Source: Octopus sinensis
Taxonomy: Eukaryota
Reading direction: 5' to 3'
Assembly: GCF_006345805.1 (NCBI RefSeq)
Contig: NW_021835641.1
Coordinates: forward strand, 1 to 26,370
DNA: 26,370 nt
In this document: in pieces, positions 257-25,840 of the stretch
How the letters are laid out: every line of letters starts with the position of its first letter
Numbering within the stretch: the first letter of the stretch is position 1
The notes under the pieces: generated by a model
Databases searched by the model: none
Seen by the model: the letters and a program-made list of their open reading frames with translations, nothing else
Told to the model about the DNA's origin: nothing
Translations under genes and position numbers: made by a program

Positions 257-640
257 GGAAGCACTCCGTCGGTTACGACGACGAGGGTTCCGGTTGATCC
301 GATCAACGGAACAGCCTGCTCGTGAAATTAACGTGTAAGTGGCTGAGCACTCCACAGACACGTGTACCCTTAACGTAGTTCTCGGGGATATTCAGCGTGA
401 CACAGAGAGTGACAAGGCCGGCCCCTTGAAATACAGGTACAACAGAAACAGGAAGTAAGAGTGAGGGAAAGTTGTGGTGAAAGAGTACAGCAGGGATCAC
501 CACCATCCCCTGTCGGAGCCTCGTGGAGCTTTTAGGTGTTTTCGCTCAATAAACACTCACAACGCCCGGTCTGGGAATCGAAACCGCGATCCTACGACAG
601 CGAGTCCGCTGCCCTAACCACTGGGCCATTGCGCCTCCAC
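257..640 (-). mobile_element. tRNA-derived SINE (head A + tail Y), full length, nested in SINE B
   Basis: Minus-strand head has A box TGGCCCAGTGG and B box GGTTTCGATTCC; near-identical copy at 18373-18752; GGTGGGCAACA at 244-254 and 643-653 is a likely target-site duplication. Confidence 0.9.
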
Positions 641-717: not shown

Positions 718-1052
718 ACCCCCTTCAGTCATGAATGACCATGGGATTGCACCGAGAAAGTTACCCTTCCAGGCACAAGTCCGGGCAAGGTTGTTTATGG
801 AAAGACAGCAGTCATCCATGCATACCAGGATCCCCTCTCCACATCCCTGATGTTATCCAAGGGAAAGGCAAAGGGGCCGATACAGCTTGGCACCTGTGAT
901 GTCGCAACTCATTTCTACAGCTGAGTGAACTGGAGCAACGCGAAATAAAGTGTCTTGCTCAAGAACACAACACGCAGCCCGGTCCGGGAATCGAACTCAC
1001 AATCTCATGATCGTAAGCTCGACGCTCTAACCACTGAACCATGCACCTTCAC
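718..1052 (-). mobile_element. tRNA-derived CORE-like SINE (head C + tail W)
   Basis: Minus strand: TGGTTCAGTGG A box, AGTTCGATTCC B box, then TGTGTTCTTGAGCAAGACACTT..CAGCTGTAGAAATGAG resembling the CORE domain; the 3' tail differs from other copies in the window. Confidence 0.8.
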
Positions 1053-2139: not shown

Positions 2140-2329
2140 GTGGAGGCGCGTGGCTTAGTGGTTAGGGTGTCAGCATCATGATCGTAAGATTGTGGTTTCG
2201 ATTCCTGGACCGGGGTGACGCGTTGTGTTTTTGAGCCAAACACTTCATTTCACGTTGCTCCAATCCACTCAGCTGGCAAAAATGAGTAACGCGGCGATGG
2301 ACTGGCGTCCCATCCAGCTGGGGAACATA
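2140..2329 (+). mobile_element. CORE-like SINE (head C + tail Z), 3'-truncated; same family as the array unit
   Basis: GTGGAGGCGCGTGGCTTAGTGGTTAGGGTGTCAGCA..GGTTTCGATTCC; reverse complement aligns with the 249 bp array unit. Confidence 0.9.
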
Positions 2330-2905: not shown

Positions 2906-3317
2906 GGGGATGTTTTGTAATAGGTGCTTGACGTAGTCTGTATTCTGTTAAGTTGATGTAGTTTGTATTCTAAAATGAGATTACATTAACAGCGATCTTT
3001 CCAATGTTTTATTTATCTCTTCATTCTATGATGCAATACTCATGTATAGAATGTGTCCCTGGTTTTCATCCCACGCACTAGAAAACTTGAAATATGGAAA
3101 ATGGATGGGTTTTTTTTTTCTCCAGACCTGTGACGTTTATAATCCACTAAAAGCAATTTTAATCAGAATATGAGAGGTTGTGGTGGAATTCAGGAATTGC
3201 GGTGATTCATTCAAGAAAATAACTATGGTGACGCAAACCTCGTTGTAGCTAACACAGGGACTCTCTGAAAGTGCTAAGCTTCAGACATCCTAAACTATAG
3301 ACCCATCACTATAAATG

Positions 3318-3372
<55 letters not shown>

Positions 3373-3373
3373 A

Positions 3374-3532
3374 CTTTATTAAAAGCAGCAGAAAATTCAA
3401 CAAAACCTGTTATTCTGAGTTTCACGTTTCCGTTCGTCGGACAGTTTTTTCTAGCAAAAACTGTCCGACGAACGGGAACGTGAAACTCAGAGTAACAGGT
3501 TTTGTTGAATTTTCTGCTGCTTTTAAATAAAG
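3374..3532. repeat. Palindrome, ~76 bp arms (3374-3449 / 3456-3532); probable inverted Penelope-like element terminus
   Basis: Arms are reverse complements with about 3 differences; flanked by (AT)n; each arm carries a hammerhead-like motif. Confidence 0.85.
3461..3498 (+). ncRNA. Type I hammerhead-like motif with U4C core variant (mirror copy on minus strand at 3407-3444)
   Basis: CUGU-CCGACGA-ACG(GGAA)CGU-GAA-AC(UCAGA)GU-A-ACAG: stem I CUGU/ACAG, GNRA-capped stem II, GUA cleavage triplet. Confidence 0.6.
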
Positions 3533-3623
3533 CATATTACTCTACCCATGGTATTTGAGTACTCTTTTTTCCACCTTGTTTCACATTTATGTGTTTACCC
3601 CGGTATATTATATATATATAATA

Positions 3624-3665
<42 letters not shown>

Positions 3666-3865
3666 TTTGAGCGTTATATATATATATATATTGAGCGTTA
3701 TATATATATATATATTTTTTTTTTTTTGAGCGTTAGACGATATACCAGAAAACCCTATTTTGTCGGGTACGTTCTGAGTCTGCGCAGTGATTTGAATAGT
3801 TTAGAAAGAGCAATTTAATAGACGCACGTGCCTCTATTAATGTGCGCTTCCCATAATAACAGGAA

Positions 3866-3938
3866 TCTTACTGAAGAGCCTACCTGAGTAAATAAATATT
3901 ATTTTTATTGCTGAAATAGGCGAAACTGCAGTCTAAGA
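3866..3938 (+). ncRNA. Canonical type I hammerhead ribozyme
   Basis: UCUUA-CUGAAGA(3871-3877)-GCCUA..UAGGC-GAA-AC(UGCA)GU-C-UAAGA; complete core, G10.1-C11.1 pair, palindromic stem III ACUGCAGU, GUC triplet with predicted cleavage after 3933. Confidence 0.85.
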
Positions 3939-4104
3939 AGAACTAAGTTTGTAAAAGTTTTTAATTTCATCTCATTAAATTTATCCAGCTTTTGTGTATC
4001 TAGTACACACTTCGCCTTTTATGTACTTTATATGAATAATATATGGCGTGTCCTAGAACACCGGCGATTATAATTAATTTTATTGTATCGCATTTGACTT
4101 TGTT

Positions 4105-4187
<83 letters not shown>

Positions 4188-4353
4188 ATAAAGTCGATAT
4201 TTAGAATACCGATCTTATCAGGTGGCCAGCATGGGAATAAAAACCTTTCAAAGGTAATAATTATTTAATTATAATTTAGGGTATCTAACAGATACCTCCA
4301 CGCTGGAAATAGGCGGTCTCAGGCGAGTTGGTATCAAAAGAGCTTATCTAATA

Positions 4354-4685
4354 AGTGACGGGGACTTAAACACACTAGTATCGGTTGTCAAGCGATTTTT
4401 TTTGGGGGGGGGACAAACACAGACACACAAACATATACATATACATACACATATATATACATATGTATATATATATATATATATATATACATACACACAT
4501 ATATATACATTATATATATATATACGACGGGCTTCTTTCAGTTTCTGTCTACCAAATCCACTCACAAGACTTTGGTCGGCCCGAGGCAATAGTAGAAGAC
4601 ACTTGCCCAAGGTTCCACGCAGTGGGACTGAACCCGGAACCATGTGGGTGGTAAGCAAGCTACTTACCACACAGCCATTTCTGCG
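4354..4685 (-). mobile_element. SINE family B, 3'-truncated, with internal microsatellite
   Basis: Collinear with 9730-10139 from aagtgacggg to acagcca. Confidence 0.85.
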
Positions 4686-4709: not shown

Positions 4710-5362
4710 AATTGATGATACGTTCTAGAAGATAACTGTAGCTACGCAGGCCTCGTTGCTACTTAAGAAAGCGCTCTCTGAAAGAGTCATACTTCAGAGC
4801 CCATCAAATGTGGACCCATCTGGTCATTTACGATAGAGAAGCTAAAAGATGCCACATCAATACAGTGGTTCTAGTTATTACTGAGCACCAGATCTCAGCC
4901 ACTGCAGCTTTTCAGCAATTCTGGGGAACGGTGAGGTGTGTTTAGAACAACAGAAAGCAGAATGCATAGAGTGTACTATCATACCGATCGCATAAGAAGC
5001 TCAAGGAAAGAACATCGAATAAGAGACGGACCATAGAACGTTACTGGTAAAGTGAAGCTGCAAACCTGGAAAGAACAAAAAAGACAGGAATCTGAAGATG
5101 CAAGAGAAATGATGCAAAGATGCCATACTGCATTGCCAGGAAGCTGATGGGATGAAGAATGAAGCAGCTGTGTATTGCTACTCAAGTAACAACAATCTGG
5201 CGAAACCCTGTTAACACTAAAAAACAAAAAGAACAAAGTGCCAGATGGTTGGAGTACTTCCAAGAGACGCTAAACCAGCCACATCCTATCGCCCTCTTTG
5301 ATATCAAATCAAGGCCCCCATCTGAAGTTTTTCATGTAAGAAGTGATGAGATCACAGAGAAG
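4710..5362 (+). pseudogene. Degenerate non-LTR retrotransposon (RTE-like) ORF2 fragment, endonuclease-to-RT linker
   Basis: Translated segments FTIEKLKD, RRTIERYW and EQSARWLEYFQETLNQPHP..SDEITEKEI resemble the LINE ORF2 linker (RWxEHFxxLLN..PTxxEI); multiple stops and frameshifts; truncated by a (CA)n tract. A related, more decayed piece lies at ~3210-3305. Confidence 0.75.
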
Positions 5363-5623
5363 GAAATACTACACGCACATACACACAAACACACACAGAC
5401 ACAGACGAACACACGCACACACACACACACACACAAATACACACATATACACACACATATACAAACATACAGATCATCAGACACTGACGCAAAAACATAC
5501 GCACACACGTATGTGTATGCCTGGGTGTGCTTATATATGCATGAAAAGTACAAATATAGTCTCACCTGTATGTATGCATATATATGTAGACATATGTGTA
5601 TGTGTATGAATATGCGTGTGTGT

Positions 5624-5908
5624 GTAGGCACATGGCCTAGATCAGCGGAATCGCGGTCGAGGTATCGCGGGTTCGAATCTCAGACCGGGCGATGTGTATG
5701 TTTATGAGCGAAACACCTAAGCTCCACGCGGCTCCGGCAGAAGGTAATGGCGAACTTCTGCTGACTCTTTTGCCACAACTTTCTCTCACTCTTTCCTCCT
5801 GCATCCTGCAGCTCACCTGCGACGAACCGGCGTCCCGTCCAGGTGGGGAACCTATACGCCAAGGAAACCGTCCCTTATGAGCCAGGAGTGGCACGAGAAG
5901 GAACAAAC
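5624..5908 (+). mobile_element. SINE (head A + tail Z)
   Basis: Head and body match 257-640 (tttatgagcgaaacacctaagctccacg); the 3' end matches the array tail (ggcgtcccgtcca..tatacgcca.ggaaaccg). Confidence 0.8.
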
Positions 5909-5982: not shown

Positions 5983-6303
5983 GTGAAGTCACGTGGCTTA
6001 GTGTTTACAGTATTCAGCTAACTATCGTTAGGTCGTGAGTTCGATTCCCGGCCTCGCGTTTTGTCCTTGAACAAGACACTTCCTTTCACGTTACTCCAGT
6101 TCATTCACCTGGAAAAATGAGTTGGACCTGTGTTTCAAAGGGCCGGCCTTATCTCATTCTGTGTCACACTGAATCTCTCTAGGAATTTAATTAAGGATAC
6201 GCATGTCTGCGGAGCACTCAGCCCCTTGCACCTTCATTTCGCAAGCAGGCGCTTTCGTCGATCGGATCAACTGGAACCCTCATCAGCATAAGTGATGGAG
6301 TTC
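5983..6303 (+). mobile_element. CORE-like SINE (head C + tail Y), diverged
   Basis: GTGGCTTAGTG..GAGTTCGATTCC + ttgaacaagacactt CORE-like part, followed by the tail of 257-450 (tcaaagggccggcctt..gatcggatcaactggaaccctc). Confidence 0.8.
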
Positions 6304-9487: not shown

Positions 9488-9657
9488 GCTCAAAGCCAGC
9501 AATTCCGAGGGAGAGGGTACGTCTATTACATCGACCCCAGCGACTTGAGATGAAGTGTTTTGTTCAAGAACACAACGGGCCGCCCAATTAGGAAATCGAA
9601 CCCAGGATCTGGCGATCGTGAAGGCAACAGTCTAACCACAAGGCCACGCGTCTTCAT
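9488..9657 (-). mobile_element. Fused fragments of a SINE D tail and a SINE C head
   Basis: attacatcgaccccag (D) joined to atgaagtgttttgttcaagaacacaacg..ctaaccacaaggccacgcg (C). Confidence 0.65.
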
Positions 9658-9729: not shown

Positions 9730-10139
9730 TTACTCTTTACTCTTTTACTTGTTTCAGTCATTTGACTGCGGCCATGCTGGAGCATCGCCTTTAGTCGAGC
9801 AAATCGACCCCAGGACTTCTTCTTTGTGTGCCCAGTACTTATTCTATCGGTCTCTTTTGCCGAACCGCTAAGTGACGGGGACGTAAACACACCAGCATCG
9901 GTTGTCAAGCAATGCTAGAGTGACAAACACAGACACACAAACATACACACACACATATATATATACATACATATATACGACGGGCTTCTTTCAGTTTCCG
10001 TCTACCAAATCCACTCACAAGGCTTTGGTTGGCCCGAGGCTATAGTAGAAGACACTTGCCCAAGGTGCCACGCAGTGGGAATGAACCCGGAACCATGTGG
10101 TTGGTTAGCAAGCTACTTACCACACAGCCACTCCTGCGC
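9730..10139 (-). mobile_element. SINE family B, full length
   Basis: tRNA-like head, internal (AT)/(GT) microsatellite, 3' part ending in an (AAGAGT)n tail; reverse complement of 15893-16346. Confidence 0.9.
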
Positions 10140-10165
10140 TTGTAAATATAAATAAATAAAATTGC

Positions 10166-13100
10166 GCCCTTTTAAAGCCTAGCCAGGCTCATGGGCCGGT
10201 TTCCCGGTTTCTATGGCGTATATGTCCCTAACTGGATGGGATGCCAGTCCATCGCAGCGTTACTCATTTTTGCCAGCTGAGTGAACTGGATCGACGTGAA
10301 ATGAAGTGTTTTGCTCAAAAGCAAAACGCGTCACCCGGTCCAGGATCGAAACCACAATCTTACGATCATGGTGCTGACACCCAACCACTAAGCCACGCAC
10401 CTCCACTTCTGCCCTTTTAAAGCCTAGCCAGGCTCATGGGCCCGGTTTCCCGGTTTCTATGGCGTATATGTTCCCTAACTGGATGGGATGCCAGTCCATC
10501 GCAGCGTTACTCATTTTTGCCAGCTGAGTGAACTGGATCGACACGTGAAATGAAGTGTTTTGCTCAAAAGCACAACGCGTCACCCGGTCCAGGAATCGAA
10601 ACCACAATCTTACGATCATGGTGCTGACACCCTAACCACTAAGCCACGCACCTCCACTTCTGCCTTTTTAAAGCCTAGCCAGGCTCATGGGCCCCGGTTC
10701 CCGGTTTCTATGGCGTATATGTTCCCTAACTGGATGGGATGCCAGTCCATCGCAGCGTTACTCATTTTTGCCAGCTGAGTGAACTGGATCGACGTGAAAT
10801 GAAGTGTTTTGCTCAAAGCAGCACAACGCGTCACCCGGTCCAGGAATCGAAACCACAATCTTACGATCATGGTGCTGACACCCTAACCACTAAGCCACGC
10901 ACCTCCACTTCTGCCCTTTTAAAGCCTAGCCAGGCTCATGGGCCCGGTTTCCCGGTTTCTGGCGTATATGTTCCCTAACTGGATGGGATGCCAGTCCATC
11001 GCAGCGTTACTCATTTTTGCCAGCTGAGTGAACTGGATCGACGTGAAATGAAGTGTTTTGCTCAAAAGCACAAAGCGCGTCACCCGGTCCAGGAATCGAA
11101 ACCACAATCTTACGCTACATGGTGCTGACACCTAACCAACTAAGCCACGCACCTCCACTTCTGCCCTTTTAAAGCCTAGCCAGGCTCATGGGCCCGGTTT
11201 CCCGGTTTCTATGGCGTATATGTTCCCTAACTGGAGGGGATGCCAGTCCATCGCCAGCGTTACTCATTTTTGCCAGCTGAGTGAACTGGATCGACGTGAA
11301 ATGAAGTGTTTTGCCTCAAAAGCACAACGCGTCACCGGTCCAGGAATCGAAAACACAACATCTTACGATCATGGTGCTGACACCCTAACCACTAAGCCAC
11401 GCACCTCCACTTCTGCCTTTTTAAAGCCTAGCCAGGCTCATGGGCCCGGTTTCCCGGTTCTATGGCGTATATTGTTCCCTAACTGGATGGGATGCCAGTC
11501 CATCAGCGTTCGACGTACTCATTTTTGCCAGCTGAGTGAACTGGATCGACGTGAAATGAAGTGTTTTGCTCAAAAGCACAACGCGTCACCCGGTCCAGGA
11601 ATCGAAACCACAATCTTACGATCATGGTGCTGACACCTAACCACTAAGCCACGCACCTCCACTTCTGCCCTTTTTAAAGCTAGCCAGGCTCATGGGCCGG
11701 TTTCCCGGTTCTATGGCGTATATGTTCCTAACTGGATGGGATGCCAGTCCATCGCAGCGTTACTCATTTTTGCCAGCTGAGTGAACTGGATCGACGTGAA
11801 ATGAAGTGTTTTGCTCAAAAGCACAACGCGTCACCCGGTCCAGGAATCGAAACCACAATCTTACGATCATGGTGCTGACACCCTAACCACTAAGCCACGC
11901 ACCTCCATTCTGCCCTTTTAAAGCCTAGCCAGGCTCATGGGCCCGGTTTCCGGTTTCTATGGCGTATATGTTCCCTAACTGGATGGGATGCCAGTCCATC
12001 GCAGCGTTACTCATTTTTGCCAGCTGAGTGAACTGGATCGACGTGAAATGAAGTGTTTGCTCAAAAGCAAACGCGTCACCCGGTCCAGGAATCGAAACCA
12101 CAATCTTACGATCATGGTGCTGACACCCTAACCACTAAGCCACGCACCTCCACTTCTGCCCTTTTAAAGCCTAGCCAGGCTCATGGGCCCGGTTTCCCGG
12201 TTTCTATGGCGTATATGTTCCCTAACTGGATGGGATGCCAGTCCATCGCAGCGTTACTCATTTTTGCCAGCTGAGTGAACTGGATCGACGTGAAATGAAG
12301 TGTTTTGCTCAAAAGCACAACGCGTCACCCGGTCCAGGAATCGAAACCACAATCTTACGATCATGGTGCTGACACCCTAACCACTAAGCCACGCACCTCC
12401 ACTTCTGCCCTTTTAAAGCCTAGCCAGGCTCATGGGCCCGGTTTCCCGGTTTCTATGGCGTATATGTTCCCTAACTGGATGGGATGCAGTCCATCGCAGC
12501 GTTACTCATTTTGCCAGCTGAGTGAACTGGATCGACGTGAAATGAAGTGTTTTGCTCAAAAGCACAACGCGTCACCCGGTCCAGGAATCGAAACCACAAT
12601 CTTACGATCATGGTGCTGACACCCTAACCACTAAGCCACGCACCTCCACTTCTGCCCTTTTAAAGCCTAGCCAGGCTCATGGGCCGGTTTCCCGGTTTCT
12701 ATGGCGTATATGTTCCCTAACTGGATGGGATGCCAGTCCATCGCAGCGTTACTCATTTTTGCCAGCTGAGTGAACTGGATCGACGTGAAATGAAGTGTTT
12801 TGCTCAAAAGCACAACGCGTCACCCGGTCCAGGAATCGAAACCACAATCTTACGATCATGGTGCTGACACCCTAACCACTAAGCCACGCACCTCCACTTC
12901 TGCCCTTTTAAAGCCTAGCCAGGCTCATGGGCCCGGTTTCCCGGTTTCTATGGCGTATATGTTCCCTAACTGGATGGGATGCCAGTCCATCGCAGCGTTA
13001 CTCATTTTTGCCAGCTGAGTGAACTGGATCGACGTGAAATGAAGTGTTTTGCTCAAAAGCACAACGCGTCACCCGGTCCAGGAATCGAAACCACAATCTT

Positions 13101-15142
13101 ACGATCATGGTGCTGACACCCTAACCACTAAGCCACGCACCTCCACTTCTGCCCTTTTAAAGCCTAGCCAGGCTCATGGGCCCGGTTTCCCGGTTTCTAT
13201 GGCGTATATGTTCCCTAACTGGATGGGATGCCAGTCCATCGCAGCGTTACTCATTTTTGCCAGCTGAGTGAACTGGATCGACGTGAAATGAAGTGTTTTG
13301 CTCAAAAGCACAACGCGTCACCCGGTCCAGGAATCGAAACCACAATCTTACGATCATGGTGCTGACACCACACCTAACCACTAAGTCACGCACCTCCACT
13401 TCTGCCCTTTTAAAGCCTAGCCAGGCTCATGGGCCCGGTTTCCCGGTTTCTATGGGGTATATGTTCCCTAACTGGATGGGATGCCAGTCCATCGCAGCGT
13501 TACTCATTTTTGCCAGCTGAGTGAACTGGATCGACGTGAAATGAAGTGTTTTGCTCAAAAGCACAACGCGTCACCCGGTCCAGGAATCGAAACCACAATT
13601 CTTACGATCATGGTGCTGACACCCTAACCACTAAGCCACGCACCTCCACTTCTGCCCTTTTAAAGCCTAGCCAGGCTCATGGGCCCGGTTTCCGGTTTCT
13701 ATGGCGTATATGTTCCCTAACTGGATGGGATGCCAGTCCATCGCAGCGTTACTCATTTTGCCAGCTGAGTGAACTGGATCGACGTGAAATGAAGTGTTTT
13801 GCTCAAAAGCACAACGCGTCACCCGGTCCAGGAATCGAAACCACAATCTTACGATCATGGTGCTGACACCCTAACCACTAAGCCACGCACCTCCACTTCT
13901 GCCCTTTTAAAGCCTAGCCAGGCTCATGGGCCTGGTTTCCCGGTTTCCATGGCGTATGTGTTCTGCAGATGGACGGGACGCCAGTCCATCGCAGCGTTAC
14001 TCATTTTTGCCAGCTGAGTGAACTGGATCGACGTGAAATGAAGTGTTTTGCTCAAAAGCACAACGCGTCACCCGGTCCAGGAATCGAAACCACAATCTTA
14101 CGATCATGGTGCTGACACCCTAACCACTAAGCCACGCACCTCCACTTCTGCCCTTTTAAAGCCTAGCCAGGCTCATGGGCCTGGTTTCCCGGTTTCCATG
14201 GCGTATGTGTTCTGCAGATGGACGGGACGCCAGTCATCGCCGCAGCGTACTCATTTTTGCCAGCTGAGTGAACTGGATCGACGTGAAATGAAGTGTTTTG
14301 CTCAAAAGCACAACGCGTCACCCGGTCCAGGAATCGAAACCACAATCTTACGATCATGGTGCTGACACCCTAACCACTAAGCCACGCACCTCCACTTCTG
14401 CCCTTTTAAAGCCTAGCCAGGCTCATGGGCCTGGTTTCCCGGTTTCCATGGCGTATGTGTTCTGCAGATGGACGGGACGCCAGTCCATCGCAGCGTTACT
14501 CATTTTTGCCAGCTGAGTGAACTGGATCGACGTGAAATGAAGTGTTTTGCTCAAAAGCACAACGCGTCACCCGGTCCAGGAATCGAAACCACAATCTTAC
14601 GATCATGGTGCTGACACCCTAACCACTAAGCCACGCACCTCCACTTCTGCCCTTTTAAAGCCTAGCCAGGCTCATGGGCTGGGTTTCCCGGTTTCCATGG
14701 CGTATGTGTTCTGCAGATGGACGGGACGCCAGTCCATCGCAGCGTTACTCATTTTTGCCAGCTGAGTGGACTGGAGCAACGTGAAATGAAGTGTTTTGCT
14801 CAAAAGCACAACGCGTCACCCGGTCCAGGAATCGAAACCACAATCTTACGATCATGGTGCTGACACCCTAACCACTAAGCCACGCACCTCCACTTCTGCC
14901 CTTTTAAAGCCTAGCCAGGCTCATGGGCCTGGTTTCCCGGTTTCCATGGCGTATGTGTTCTGCAGATGGACGGGACGCCAGTCCATCGCAGCGTTACTCA
15001 TTTTTGCCAGCTGAGTGGACTGGAGCAACGTGAAATGAAGTGTTTTGCTCAAGAACACAACGCGTCACCCGGTCCAGGAATCGAAAACACAATCTTACGA
15101 TCATGGTGCTGACACCCTAACCACTAAGCCACGCGCCTCCAC
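10166..15142 (-). repeat. Tandem head-to-tail array of 20 SINE copies (head C + CORE-like domain + tail Z), ~249 bp unit
   Basis: 20 occurrences of the ttgctcaa(aag/gaa)cacaacgcg motif and its variants at ~249 bp spacing; each unit has A box TGGCTTAGTGG and B box GGTTTCGATTCC on the minus strand; the (TTTA)n tail is present only at the left end (10146-10165); junction cctccac-ttct-gccctttt. Confidence 0.97.
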
Positions 15143-15175
15143 CTTCATACATTGTACGAACAGAATAAGCGGATA

Positions 15176-15240
15176 CGTTCAGGAATCGAACCCGTGTCTG
15201 CGAACTCCGTTTGGTACTAGCCACAACCTTTAGCTATTTA
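15176..15240 (-). mobile_element. Degenerate tRNA-like or SINE head fragment
   Basis: Minus strand TAGCTAAAGG (A-box-like) and GGGTTCGATTCC (B box); no cloverleaf evident. Confidence 0.35.
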
Positions 15241-18001: not shown

Positions 18002-18795
18002 CAGCACTAACCCTCTTCCACACTAAACTATTGCCACCAATGGACCAACACCACCCACCTCTCTTCGACTGTATTACCACTAATAGAGGTGCAGCACTAA
18101 CCACTAATAGAGGCGCACCACTAACCTACTCAGTACTATTCTTTTGCGACTGGTATATCTACAACACTAACCTCTTTTGAGCTCAACTACCACCGACAAA
18201 CGTGTAGCACTAACCTATTTAATATTATACTATTACTAATGTTATGTTTACAGCACAAACTTATCTTAAACTAACTTACCATTAATAGAGCTGCAGCACT
18301 AACCACTCTCACGCAATACTATTGCTACAAATAGACATACAGCACTAACTTATCTTTGACTGTACTGGATATGGAAGCACTCCGTCGGTTACGACGACGA
18401 GGGTTCCAGTTGATCCGAATCAACGGAACAACCTGCTCGTGAAATTAACGTGTAAGTGGCTGAGCACTCCACAGACACGTGTACTCTTAACGTACTCGGG
18501 GATATTCAGCGTGACACAGAGAGTGACAAGGCCGGCCCTTTGAAATACAGGTACAACAGAAACAGGAAGTAAGAGTGAGAGAAAGTTGTGGTGAAAGAGT
18601 ACAGCAGGGATCACTACCACCCCTGCCGGAGGCTCGTGGAGCTTTAGGCGTTTTCGCTCAATAAACACTCACAACGCCCGGTCTGGGAATCGAAACCGCG
18701 ATCCTATGACCGCGAGTCCGCTGCCCTAACCACTGGGCCATTGCGCCTCCACTCTGACTGTACTACCACCTACAGAAGTGCAGTGCTAACCTACT
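18002..18795. repeat. Degenerate ~44-46 bp minisatellite (CAGCACTAACC motif) interrupted by a SINE
   Basis: Motif variants at 18002, 18046, 18092, 18116, 18162, 18205, 18251, 18294, 18340 and 18781. Confidence 0.75.
18373..18752 (-). mobile_element. tRNA-derived SINE (head A + tail Y), full length
   Basis: Near-identical to 257-640; target-site duplication TGACTGTACT at 18357-18366 and 18755-18764. Confidence 0.92.
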
Positions 18796-19346: not shown

Positions 19347-19915
19347 TAAGGCGGCGAGATGGCAGAATCGTTACCCCGCGCCGAGCGAAATGCTTAGCGG
19401 CTTTTCGGCCGTCGTTACGTTCTGTGTTCAAATTCCGTCGAGGTCGACTTTGCCTTTCATCCTTTCGGGGTCGATAAATTAAGTACCAATTGCGTACTGG
19501 AGTCAATCTAATTGACTGGTCCCCTCCCCCCGAAATTTCAAGCCTTGTGCCTAGATTAGAGAAAAAAGAAATTTCGTCCGTCTTTACGTTTTGAGTTTGA
19601 ATTCCGCCGAGGTCGACTTTGCCTTTCATCCTTTCGGGGTCGATAAATTAAGTACCAATTGCGTACTGGAGTCGATCTAATTGACTGGCCCCCTCCCCCC
19701 AAAATTTCAGGCCTTGTGCCTAGATTAGAGAAAAAAGAAATTTCGTCCGTCTTTACGTTTGGAGTTTGAATTCCGCCGAGGTCGACTTTGCCTTTCGTCC
19801 TGTCCAGATCGACTTTGCTCTCGTCCTTTCGGAATGGGTAAAATAAGTTCCATTTGAAGTCTGGGATCGATGTAATCGAGTTACCCTTCCGCTGAACTTG
19901 CTGTCCCCGTGCCAA
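19347..19915 (+). mobile_element. SINE family D trimer (full copy + chimeric copy + 5'-truncated copy), 169 bp period
   Basis: Junction tagattagagaaaaaagaaatttcgtccgtctttacgtt is repeated (tttcgtccgt at 19572 and 19741). Confidence 0.9.
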
Positions 19916-20106
19916 AATTTGAAACCAAAACCGTTTTCAACAACGGGAGGGGTAAAGTGTTAGGTAGTTAACACATGACTACATTGACTCACTGATGAGT
20001 TATTTTTCAGTTGTGTGTTCGAGTCCTACCAATGTCAAACTGTTTGTCTATTTTCCTGGAATTGATTATAAAATTACCTACCAGTTGCAATTTAAATAAT
20101 AGCTTC

Positions 20107-21899: not shown

Positions 21900-22184
21900 T
21901 GGATAGATAGAAAGATAGATATACAGATAGAAACATACATACATACATACATACATACATACATACATACATACATACGTACATACATACATACATACAT
22001 ACATGCATGCATACATACATACATACATACATACATACATACATACATCATACATACATACATACATACATGCATACATACGTACGTACATACATATATA
22101 CATACATAATATATACATACATACATAGACAGACAGGTAGATAGATAAACAGACAGACAGGTAGATAGATAGACAGACAGACGA

Positions 22185-22278
<94 letters not shown>

Positions 22279-22340
22279 GACAGACAGAGAGACTGACTGA
22301 CAGACAGACAGAAGAACAGATACACACTGGCACAAGAAAC

Positions 22341-22373
<33 letters not shown>

Positions 22374-22400
22374 AAGACAGATAAACAACACACATATACA
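21900..22400. repeat. Compound microsatellite (ACAT)n/(AGAC)n/(AGAT)n
   Basis: Direct reading of the sequence. Confidence 0.95.
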
Positions 22401-23892: not shown

Positions 23893-24379
<487 letters not shown>

Positions 24380-24944: not shown

Positions 24945-25057
24945 ATCGGCAACCTACCCGACCCGTCTTGAAACACGAACCGAGGAGTCCCAGTCGACTG
25001 CGAGTCGTTGGAGACTTTTACTTCGCGAACTCCGACGGCACAGCCAAAGCGAAAGGC
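24945..25057 (+). rRNA. 28S rRNA fragment (non-functional dispersed copy, core segment around D3)
   Basis: TCGGCAACCTACCCGACCCGTCTTGAAACACGAACCGAGGAGTC matches the conserved eukaryotic LSU motif CCCGACCCGTCTTGAAACACGGACCAAGGAGTC; downstream helix GTCGTTGGAG/CTCCGACGGC pairs fully. Confidence 0.85.
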
Positions 25058-25160
25058 AAAGTCGACCTCAGCGGAATTTGAACTCAGAACGTAACGGCAG
25101 ACAACATTCGGCTACGCATTTCGCCCGGCGTGCTAACGTTTCTGCCAGCTCGTCGACTTA
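25051..25160 (-). mobile_element. SINE family D, 5' half
   Basis: gaaaggcaaagtcgacctcagcggaatttgaactcagaacg..ctgccagctcgtcgactta. Confidence 0.85.
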
Positions 25161-25389
25161 ATAATAATAATAATTCTTTCTACTGGAAGCACAAGGCCTC
25201 AAATTTGAGGGAAGGGATTAAGTCGATTACATCGACCTCCAGTGTTTCACTGGTACTTAATTTATCGACCTCGAAAGGATGAAAGGCAAAGTCGAACTCA
25301 GTTGAATTTGAACTCAGAACGTGAAGCAGGGTGAAATACCGCTAAGCATTTTGTCCGACCTGCTAACGATCCTGCCCGCTCGCCGCCTT
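25161..25389 (-). mobile_element. SINE family D, full length with (TTA)n tail
   Basis: Collinear with the other D copies. Confidence 0.88.
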
Positions 25390-25840
25390 TAAATTGGAAG
25401 CAATAATTGATATCAGTAGCTCCATGTCAAACCCGCCCCTATCAATAAAACTTTTATTAATACCTTCTGGTATTAATATCTCGAGGCACGCCCAGTAATG
25501 TAAATTGAAGATCTTTGTCCTTTTCTATTAGTTTAATACAAAGAATAGTGACAGTTCTAATAACCCCCTGCTGATTCTCCGAGAAACGGAATTAAAAATA
25601 AATGTTGCGAAATTGGTACCGACAGCCAGTCATTTTGCCCATCAGGAAATTATTGGGTTTTTTTTATTGTTGTGGACGATGAGAGATAAAAGACAGCGTT
25701 TCCTAATCTAGGGGCTGCGATCTAAATTAGGTAGCGCTTTAATTCTGAAAGGATCGCGAAGCGAAATCTTTCACTTTTTTCAAGATATTTGCTGAAATGC
25801 GTAAAAATGTAAAATGTTTGTAATGAATATGATGCGGGCA

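What the first reader, a model, noticed from the sequence alone, without database searches (positions are those of the whole stretch)
10166..15142. A SINE turned into a 20-copy, 5 kb satellite with a Pol III promoter in every unit
Seen: 20 head-to-tail copies of a ~249 bp unit that is a whole SINE (tRNA-like head, CORE-like middle, tail). The (TTTA)n tail occurs only at the left edge, and internal junctions fuse head to tail through just 'ttct'. A dispersed relative lies at 2140-2329. Known: SINEs normally insert as dispersed monomers; SINE-derived satellites are reported in some vertebrates, and I do not know of a description in cephalopods. Inference: a young SINE-derived satellite forming a dense cluster of TFIIIC/Pol III sites that could act as an RNA source or chromatin boundary.
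Basis: partly seen in the sequence, partly recalled or inferred. Interest (0 to 1): 0.82.

Follow-up and report, generated by a model that had tools for sequence, protein, structure and literature searches.

The report
Tandem array of 20 SINE copies
A short mobile element (a CORE-type, tRNA-promoter SINE) sits here as 20 head-to-tail copies that grew by out-of-register recombination between two older neighbouring copies; this kind of SINE array is already known in other molluscs and there is no evidence yet that it does anything.

Summary
TRF finds 20.0 copies of a 249-bp unit at 10166-15142 (97% matches). The SINE sense strand is the window's minus strand. Each unit runs from the first to the last base of a SINE body. 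All 19 internal junctions are identical (GGGC-AGAA-GTGGAGG). The A/T-rich tail (10140-10165) follows only the last unit.

The interpretation needs trimming.
- The head is not detectably tRNA-like in fold. It only carries A- and B-box motifs, and most units also have a TTTT run at about position 89.
- The array is not uniformly young. It holds two parental unit types about 7% apart, u1 and u6-20. Between them lie chimeric units (u2, u3-5) whose breakpoints form a perfect 5'-to-3' staircase. This is the signature of unequal crossing-over starting from an old heterodimer, followed by recent block expansion.
- Most remaining differences are 1-nt homopolymer indels, probably long-read consensus noise.
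- One 5-kb locus is a SINE multimer, not a demonstrated satellite.
- Tandem SINE arrays of 4-15 units are published for bivalves, and SINE-derived satellites for squamates. The same window holds two more SINE tandems.

The Pol III/TFIIIC function is untested. The organism, copy number and genome-wide spread could not be checked. I rate it a new member of a known kind, of modest interest.

The parts
10166..15142 (-). Tandem array of 20 complete SINE bodies (245 nt body + AGAA spacer = 249-bp unit).
   Evidence: TRF. Unit starts. Alignment.
14894..15142 (-). Unit 1, the pure parental type A and the 5'-most unit in the SINE sense.
   Evidence: Variable-site table.
14645..14893 (-). Unit 2, a chimera: B-type up to about position 90, A-type from position 116 on.
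13897..14644 (-). Units 3-5, a chimera: B-type up to position 125, A-type from position 167 on.
10166..13896 (-). Units 6-20, the pure type B block. The copies are near-identical apart from small indels, mostly in homopolymers.
10140..10165 (-). A/T-rich (TTTA-type) SINE tail, present only after unit 20.
9964..10139 (-). A full copy of a different SINE family in the same orientation. Its 5' end abuts the array's tail. Other copies lie at 1420-1594 and 4511-4685.
2140..2329 (+). Dispersed monomer of the same family (93% identity, unit positions 1-189). It is cut at its 3' side where another SINE begins.
5622..5905 (+). A longer related SINE that shares the head boxes and the 3' module (unit positions ~150-243), followed by a (TG)n tail. 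It shows that the unit's 3' part and end point belong to the SINE.
907..1052 (-). Dispersed relative (80% identity, unit positions 1-147), used as an outgroup.

Best explanation
This is a real, locally amplified multimer of a CORE-type SINE with a tRNA-promoter head. It is a by-product of recombination rather than a dedicated functional element.

Proposed history:
1. Two copies of the same SINE family came to lie head-to-tail, with only AGAA between the body of the upstream copy (type A) and the head of the downstream copy (type B, which kept its tail). This happened either by insertion of one copy at the body/tail boundary of the other, or by an early duplication.
2. The two copies are about 7% apart.
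3. Out-of-register homologous recombination between them (unequal sister-chromatid or meiotic exchange, possibly with conversion) repeatedly produced 5'-B/3'-A chimeric units between the parents and raised the copy number.
4. The B block (15 units) and the chimera blocks then expanded very recently.

Shown: the architecture, the identical junctions, the two parental lineages and the chimeric staircase. Inferred: the order of events, the mechanism of the first dimer, and the neutrality of the array. Each unit keeps A- and B-box motifs, so the locus is a potential cluster of Pol III/TFIIIC sites, but nothing here shows that it is used.
For: Identical junction: the same AGAA junction occurs in all 19 internal positions and a tail follows only the last unit, so there was one junction-forming event and not 20 insertions.

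Staircase: the 16 informative sites sort perfectly along the unit. Positions 8-90 separate u1 from the rest, 116-125 separate u1-2 from the rest, and 167-198 separate u1-5 from u6-20. The chance of such an order is about 2.5e-6.

Polarity: with the dispersed copies d1, d2 and d5 as outgroups, type A has its own derived states (positions 56, 177, 181, 182, 188) and type B has its own (88, 116, 118, 167, 180, 198). Units 2-5 combine derived states of both. This is incompatible with a mutation-only tree and requires recombination. The chimeras are 5'-B/3'-A and lie between A (upstream) and B (downstream), which is exactly the product expected when a downstream B pairs with an upstream A.

Age: u1, type B and d1 are about equally distant from one another (JC 0.061-0.072), so the two founders are as old as an ordinary dispersed copy. 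Within the B block the differences are mostly small indels, chiefly 1-nt homopolymer deletions, so true identity is close to 100%.

Recurrence: the same window has two more SINE tandems, at 19347-19920 and 25019-25390.

Precedent: SINE arrays of 4-15 units, attributed to unequal recombination, are described in bivalves (PMC11481361). Initial duplication by unequal homologous recombination is proposed for squamate sSats (PMC10702118).
Against: Polarity rests on only three in-window outgroup copies. No reads or second assembly were available, so the copy number is unverified. No target-site duplication could be identified; only a 4-nt GAAG is shared between the 5' flank and the junction, which is weak. 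The differences between A and B cluster at positions 167-198, which could also reflect a conversion patch from a third copy. Neutrality is assumed, not shown.
Confidence: 0.72

Rival explanations
1. Functional Pol III/TFIIIC cluster. The array is maintained because its 20 A/B-box pairs recruit TFIIIC or Pol III, so that it acts as a chromatin boundary or as a source of small tRNA-like or SINE RNAs.
For: There are 20 A+B box pairs in 5 kb, against about 7 such elements in the other 21 kb. The boxes are the best-conserved parts of the head across 8 family members. tDNA and SINE boundary activity is established in yeast and mammals (general knowledge).
Against: There are no expression or binding data. 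The boxes are inherited passively from a SINE that was copied very recently, so their presence says nothing about selection. A TTTT run at about position 89 in 17/20 units would truncate transcripts. No gene lies in the 26-kb window for the array to insulate.
Confidence: 0.1
2. Assembly artefact or mis-estimated copy number. A long-read assembler inflated a short SINE dimer or trimer into 20 units.
For: The indel-rich differences, mostly in homopolymers, show that the region's consensus is poorly polished. Tandem repeats are prone to length errors.
Against: Four distinct unit types lie in an ordered, biologically sensible arrangement with clean unique flanks on both sides. An artefact would not create graded chimeras. 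At least 4 units with 3 junctions must be real.
Confidence: 0.1
3. Rolling-circle amplification. A circularised SINE monomer (eccDNA or cDNA) was amplified by rolling-circle replication and the concatemer reintegrated.
For: A single circularisation would explain one identical junction in all units.
Against: It predicts one unit type. Instead there are two ~7% diverged parents with graded chimeras. It does not predict that the array starts exactly at the SINE 5' end and finishes with a normal tail.
Confidence: 0.05
4. Retrotransposition of a multimeric read-through transcript, or serial RT template jumping, created the array in one step.
For: Template jumping by non-LTR reverse transcriptases is known (general knowledge). 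The tail occurs only at the 3' end.
Against: A 5-kb Pol III transcript through 17 TTTT runs is implausible. Independent jumps would not give 19 identical junctions. The presence of two diverged unit types and chimeras fits DNA recombination better.
Confidence: 0.03

Closest known systems
Tandem SINE arrays in bivalves (Scapharca broughtonii; PMC11481361)
   Same: A mollusc host. Full-length tRNA-related SINEs with a conserved central domain lie head to tail. The units are truncated at the same point of the 3' tail, with 4-15 units per array. Unequal homologous recombination is the proposed cause.
   Different: Here there are 20 units. The spacer is only AGAA and cannot be shown to be a target-site duplication. 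Only the last unit has a tail, a mix of the two published layouts TSD1-(SINE-TSD1)n and TSD1-(SINE)n-TSD1. The host is probably a cephalopod, which I could not verify. The chimeric staircase that documents the recombination was not reported there.
SINE-derived satellites (sSat) of squamate reptiles (PMC10702118)
   Same: Tandem repeats derived from tRNA-related SINEs, with a terminal unit that extends to the SINE end. The published model is duplication, then amplification, then homogenisation.
   Different: sSat units are portions of a SINE, occur at many loci with up to ~1000 units, and favour subtelomeres. Here the unit is the whole SINE body and only one locus is known.
SINE multimers in the jerboa Allactaga bullata, and tandem-like SINE arrays in potato (as cited in PMC10702118 and PMC11481361)
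   Same: Full-length SINEs in direct tandem.
   Different: Those reach up to 8 units and generally keep tails between copies, pointing to repeated insertion. Here the junction is tail-less and the array was amplified as DNA.
Amphibian Pol III-transcribed tandem repeats (PolIII/TAN of Cynops, OAX/satellite I of Xenopus, Rana/polIII), as reviewed in PMC10702118
   Same: Tandem units of ~250-750 bp carrying tRNA-type A/B boxes. PolIII/TAN is reported there as capable of in vitro transcription.
   Different: For those repeats no parent SINE is known and they are highly abundant. Here the parent SINE family is evident, while abundance and transcription are unknown.
CORE-SINE superfamily, including Octopus OR2 (Ohshima and Okada 1994, as cited in PMC4758252)
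   Same: A Pol III box head followed by a central domain matching the CORE motif (…TTGAGCAA..CACTT…TCCAGTTCACTCAGCTG..AAATGAGT).
   Different: A related conserved domain (Deu) is not excluded.

Membership tests
tRNA-derived SINE | Internal Pol III promoter: an A box (TRGCNNAGTGG) and a B box (GGTTCGANNCC) at tRNA-like spacing near the 5' end. | tested here: met
   The A box is exact in 18/20 units. The B box GGTTTCGATTCC (one extra T, or one mismatch) is present in 17/20 units, 44 nt downstream of the A box. The boxes are conserved across 8 family members.
tRNA-derived SINE | Recognisable similarity of the head to a tRNA (cloverleaf or an identifiable parent tRNA). | tested here: not met
   ARAGORN finds no gene, and its only calls at the most relaxed threshold are spurious. 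The Rfam tRNA model gives no hit at E<=1 on the window or E<=10 on a single unit. The head is tRNA-related only through its boxes.
tRNA-derived SINE | Dispersed copies with different flanks and a simple-repeat or A/T-rich tail. | tested here: met
   Seven dispersed relatives have unrelated flanks. Tails are seen after unit 20 and after the relative at 5622-5905. Only one close relative (93%) is in the window, and it is 3'-truncated.
tRNA-derived SINE | Target-site duplications and a partner LINE sharing the 3' end. | tested here: inconclusive
   No convincing TSD was found; only GAAG is shared between the 5' flank and the junction. No LINE in the window shares the 3' module.
CORE-SINE superfamily | A central ~65-nt CORE domain. 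| tested here: met
   Unit positions 90-148 align with the core of a SINE family from an unrelated metagenome (0/1000 shuffles reach the score, though the seed pattern came from the unit). Positions 83-105 align with the published MIR core oligo (18/1000 shuffles) (PMC6344866). No curated CORE model was available, so CORE versus a related domain is not fully resolved.
Tandem SINE array (bivalve type, PMC11481361) | Several elements of one SINE family directly one after another, truncated at the same tail position. | tested here: met
   20 units, all cut after ...AAAAGGGC and joined by AGAA.
Tandem SINE array (bivalve type, PMC11481361) | Units separated or flanked by the same target-site duplication. 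| tested here: inconclusive
   The spacer AGAA(G) resembles the 5' flank GAAG. The match is only 4 nt and is absent after the last unit.
Satellite DNA, strict sense | Long arrays at many loci or a high genomic share, usually heterochromatic, evolving in concert between loci. | not testable with these tools
   Only this 26-kb window is available. The head pattern had no match in the metagenome, prokaryote-genome or viral collections. ORF-based protein searches were empty.
Pol III-transcribed tandem repeat (PolIII/TAN, OAX type) | Demonstrated Pol III transcription of the units. | not testable with these tools
   Only motifs are available. A TTTT run at about position 89 (17/20 units) predicts short products if the units are transcribed.

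The most novel reading that the evidence does not exclude
The array is one visible locus of a cephalopod SINE-derived satellite family, or an actively used domain: a dense block of TFIIIC/Pol III sites that produces ~90-nt tRNA-like RNAs or insulates chromatin, and possibly a master locus feeding SINE amplification. The very multi-kb, low-divergence 'SINE insertions' listed for Octopus vulgaris (tRNA-Deu: 5 insertions totalling 26.9 kb; tRNA-CORE: 1 insertion of 1.9 kb; PMC13282606) would then be more such arrays.
Probability: 0.12. Interest if true: 0.6.

Novelty: new member of a known kind. Interest (0 to 1): 0.3.

Why it matters
It is a clean, dissectable example of how a dispersed retroelement turns into a tandem repeat. 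Both parental copies, the single founding junction and a graded series of recombinant units are still readable in one 5-kb locus. That gives direct sequence evidence for the 'duplication, then unequal exchange, then homogenisation' model of satellite birth, which in the two papers read here is proposed from the layout of the arrays. It would extend tandem SINE arrays from bivalves to what is probably a cephalopod. For annotation it is a warning: such arrays are easily scored as single, very recent 'active' SINE insertions. If the locus were bound by TFIIIC or transcribed it would become more interesting, but nothing here shows that.

Tried and rejected
- tRNA detection on the head: ARAGORN at default and at thresholds relaxed down to -ps60 (the only calls, at -ps60, are spurious), and Rfam on the whole window and on a single unit. 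All negative. The 87 Rfam 'miRNA/scaRNA' hits are microsatellite artefacts.
- Route to related loci through mechanical ORFs. The 72-aa junction-spanning ORF and a LINE-like ORF fragment both found nothing in the protein database. This closed the way to other assemblies and to naming the organism.
- Exact-pattern scans with the SINE head in the metagenome, prokaryotic-genome and viral collections gave 0 hits. A CORE-motif pattern retrieved 24 contigs from one metagenome. They carry a different CORE-SINE from another animal, with only ~35 nt shared. They were useful for the CORE test only.
- Full-text searches for the SINE's own sequence strings gave 0 papers. Albertin 2015 and Gilbert & Labuda 1999 are not held.
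- Stepwise-mutation explanation of the unit types: rejected because the intermediate units combine derived states of both end types.
- Twenty independent insertions: rejected because of the identical tail-less junction.
- Target-site duplication search around the array: inconclusive.
Full report
**1. The observation**

Tandem Repeats Finder reports one outstanding array in the window: 10166-15142, period 249, 20.0 copies, 97% matches, 1% indels, score 9029. G+C rises from about 0.37-0.43 in the flanks to 0.51-0.53 across it. Anchoring on the first 22 nt of the unit finds 20 starts on the minus strand, spaced 245-253 bp apart. The sense strand of the element is therefore the window's minus strand. 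'Left edge' in the finding means the 3' end of the array.

The multiple alignment and the raw sequence show that every internal junction reads, in sense...GGCTTTAAAAGGGC-AGAA-GTGGAGGTGCG.... Only the last unit (u20) is followed by an A/T-rich tail, GCAATTTTATTTATTTATATTTACAA (+ strand 10140-10165).

**2. Is the unit a whole SINE?**

BLAST of the unit consensus against the rest of the window finds these relatives:
- 2140-2329 (+): 93% identity over unit positions 1-189.
- 907-1052 (-): 80% identity.
- 5992-6122 (+), 9541-9649 (-), 536-640 (-) and 18677-18752 (-): more diverged.
- 5622-5905 (+): a longer element that shares the head and, separately, unit positions ~150-243.

All eight heads start at the same base (GTG[GAT]AG...). 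Their best-conserved blocks are the A-box and B-box regions. The 5622-5905 element ends within a few bases of where the unit ends and is then followed by (TG)n. The 249-bp unit is thus a complete SINE body of 245 nt plus four extra bases. It is not a fragment and it contains no captured flank.

*Head.* The A box TGGCTTAGTGG is exact in 18 of 20 units. A B-box-like GGTTTCGATTCC (the consensus GGTTCGANNCC with one extra T) lies 44 nt downstream in 17 of 20 units. The head is nevertheless not detectably a tRNA:
- ARAGORN finds nothing at default thresholds and nothing meaningful at thresholds relaxed to 60%.
- The Rfam tRNA model gives no hit at E<=1 on the window or E<=10 on a single unit.

'tRNA-like' here means 'carries tRNA-type promoter boxes'.

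*Middle.* Unit positions 90-148 align with the central domain of a SINE family that I recovered from an unrelated JGI metagenome (Ga0256846, loci L001-L024). The search pattern was taken from the unit. None of 1000 shuffles reached the alignment score, but part of the match is there by construction. Positions 83-105 also align with the MIR core oligonucleotide printed in PMC6344866; 18 of 1000 shuffles reach that score. The literature lists an Octopus SINE, OR2, among CORE-SINEs (PMC4758252). The O. vulgaris repeat annotation lists tRNA-CORE families (PMC13282606). 'CORE-like middle' is therefore reasonable. I could not test identity with OR2 or exclude a related conserved domain.

**3. Anatomy of the array**

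The units fall into four types in order: u1, u2, u3-5 and u6-20. The sixteen informative substitutions sort perfectly along the unit:
- positions 8, 56, 88, 90 separate u1 from all the others;
- positions 116, 118, 125 separate u1-2 from u3-20;
- positions 167-198 (nine sites) separate u1-5 from u6-20.

The chance of such a perfect staircase is about 2.5e-6.

I polarised the sites with the dispersed copies at 2140, 1052 and 5815. The u1 lineage ('A') has private derived states at positions 56, 177, 181, 182 and 188. The u6-20 lineage ('B') has private derived states at 88, 116, 118, 167, 180 and 198. Units 2-5 carry derived states of both lineages. Two overlapping, non-nested sets of derived states cannot arise on a tree by mutation alone, so these units are recombinants. 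They are B-type at the 5' side and A-type at the 3' side, and they lie between A (upstream) and B (downstream). That is exactly the product expected when a downstream B unit mispairs with an upstream A unit and an exchange occurs inside the unit.

The JC distances are 0.072 between u1 and B, 0.061 between u1 and the dispersed copy d1 (2140-2329), and 0.066 between B and d1. The two parental units are therefore as diverged from each other as from an ordinary dispersed copy. The calibration quoted for O. vulgaris is JC 0.065 to consensus at about 18 My (PMC13282606). Applied here it would put the A/B split on the order of 10 My. This applies only if the window is from a comparable octopus, which I could not verify.

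The 15 B units, by contrast, differ almost only by small indels, mostly 1-nt deletions in short homopolymers (AAAAA to AAAA, GGG to GG), and by small clusters that are misaligned indels. Indels this far in excess of substitutions look like unpolished long-read consensus error rather than biology. The B block is probably close to 100% identical and very recent.

**4. Most likely history and mechanism**

(i) Two copies of the family came to lie head to tail, with AGAA between the upstream body and the downstream head. The downstream copy kept its tail. This could be an insertion of one copy at the body/tail boundary of the other, since A/T-rich tails are common targets. The abutting SINE of another family at 9964-10139 shows that such nesting happens here. 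It could equally be an early duplication. The 5' flank ends in GAAG and the junction reads AGAAG, a 4-nt resemblance too short to count as a target-site duplication.

(ii) Out-of-register homologous recombination between A and B created chimeras and added units.

(iii) Individual blocks, especially B, expanded recently.

The single shared junction excludes 20 independent insertions. The two diverged parents and the graded chimeras argue against rolling-circle amplification of one monomer and against one-step retrotransposition of a multimer. I put about 0.72 on this account.

The main residual doubts are the true copy number and the small outgroup set. An assembly artefact cannot be excluded without reads, but four ordered unit types and clean flanks mean that at least a multi-unit array is real.

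**5. Function**

The array carries 20 A+B box pairs in 5 kb, against about seven such elements in the remaining 21 kb.

Several points weigh against reading more into this:
- The boxes were copied passively and recently, so their integrity says nothing about selection.
- Seventeen of 20 units have a TTTT run at about position 89. This is a minimal Pol III terminator in well-studied systems (general knowledge), so any transcripts would tend to be ~90-nt head RNAs rather than full SINE RNAs.
- No gene is visible in the window.

I treat the boundary/RNA-source idea as an untested rival (about 0.1).

**6. Comparison with what is known**

Tandem-like SINE structures have been surveyed in bivalves. 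In Scapharca broughtonii, 64 elements form arrays of 4-15 units with the layouts TSD1-(SINE-TSD1)n and TSD1-(SINE)n-TSD1, and the arrays are attributed to unequal homologous recombination (PMC11481361). Squamates have SINE-derived satellites of up to ~1000 units. The same paper notes SINE multimers of up to eight units in a jerboa, and reviews the amphibian Pol III tandem repeats PolIII/TAN, OAX, Rana/polIII and Hy/polIII (PMC10702118).

The present array fits the bivalve kind most closely. It differs in three ways:
- it has more units (20);
- it has a 4-nt spacer, with a tail only at the end;
- it preserves both parents and the recombinants.

It does not meet the strict definition of a satellite on present evidence, because only one locus is known.

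Two literature searches on octopus or cephalopod SINEs and tandem repeats returned no paper describing such arrays. The O. vulgaris 'recently active' table lists SINE 'insertions' averaging several kb: tRNA-Deu, 5 insertions totalling 26,935 bp; tRNA-CORE, 1 insertion of 1,900 bp. Such entries would be expected if arrays like this one were merged into single annotations. This is a hint, not a demonstration.

Within this window SINE tandemisation recurs:
- at 19347-19920, a full copy of another SINE is followed by two copies 5'-truncated at the same base, each with its A-rich tail (period 169);
- at 25019-25390, two diverged copies lie side by side.

**7. Limits**

The tools hold no cephalopod genome, no Dfam or Repbase library, and no reads. 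Head-pattern scans of the metagenome, prokaryote-genome and viral collections, and two protein searches, were empty. The following could not be tested:
- the organism;
- the family name;
- the genome-wide distribution of the unit and its junction;
- the real copy number;
- any transcription or binding.

**8. Verdict**

It is a new member of a known kind (tandem SINE multimer or nascent SINE-derived tandem repeat), with an unusually legible recombination history. Interest is modest at 0.3. The more exciting readings, a genome-wide SINE satellite or an active Pol III/TFIIIC domain, remain possible at roughly 0.12.

Noticed in passing
window 19347-19920 (+): A second SINE-derived tandem repeat, from a different SINE family. 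One full-length copy is followed by two copies 5'-truncated at the same base. The period is 169 bp and each copy has its A-rich tail (GAGAAAAAAGAAA). The third copy has a diverged body. The layout resembles the published bivalve TSD1-(SINE)n-TSD1 type.
   Followed up: partly
window 25019-25390 (-): Two diverged copies (78% identity) of that same second SINE family lie side by side in the same orientation, 230 bp apart. They are probably independent neighbouring insertions.
   Followed up: partly
window 15160-15240 (-): A tRNA-like box pair (…GTGGCTAGTACC…GGGTTCGATTCC…) lies directly upstream of array unit 1. ARAGORN and Rfam do not call it a tRNA. It may be a remnant of another SINE head or a tRNA pseudogene.
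   Followed up: no
window 9964-10139 (-); also 1420-1594 and 4511-4685: A full copy of a third SINE family (head GCGCAGGAGTGGCTGTGTGG…, CORE-like CCTTGGGCAAGTGTCTTC) starts exactly where the array's tail ends, in the same orientation. This is a nest of SINEs inserted into or next to each other's tails.
   Followed up: partly
window 10166-13896: Differences among the 15 type-B units are dominated by 1-nt deletions in short homopolymers, several of them recurring at the same runs in non-adjacent units. This looks like systematic long-read consensus error, so the sequence and perhaps the copy number of this stretch are not polished.
   Followed up: partly
loci L001-L024 (JGI metagenome Ga0256846): At least 24 contigs of one metagenome carry a ~330-bp tRNA-headed CORE-SINE from an unidentified animal. 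It shares the stretch TCCAGTTCACTCAGCTG..AAATGAGT exactly with this window's SINEs. This illustrates the cross-taxon conservation of the CORE domain and shows host DNA in that sample.
   Followed up: partly
window 5159-5400 (+): An ORF fragment with a LINE-like motif (…RWLEYFQETLNQP…). It is probably a decayed non-LTR retrotransposon piece. It had no match in the protein database.
   Followed up: partly
whole window, e.g. 23912-24379 (AGAT)119, 21933-22381, 3310-4524: The window is extremely rich in microsatellites. All 87 sub-threshold Rfam hits (mir-297, mir-1277, SCARNA7 and others) fall on these repeats and are artefacts.
   Followed up: yes
window 2329/2330: The 93% dispersed relative stops at unit position 189, exactly where an inverted, internally truncated copy of the second SINE family begins. 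Both are cut at the joint, which suggests a deletion or recombination between neighbouring SINEs.
   Followed up: no
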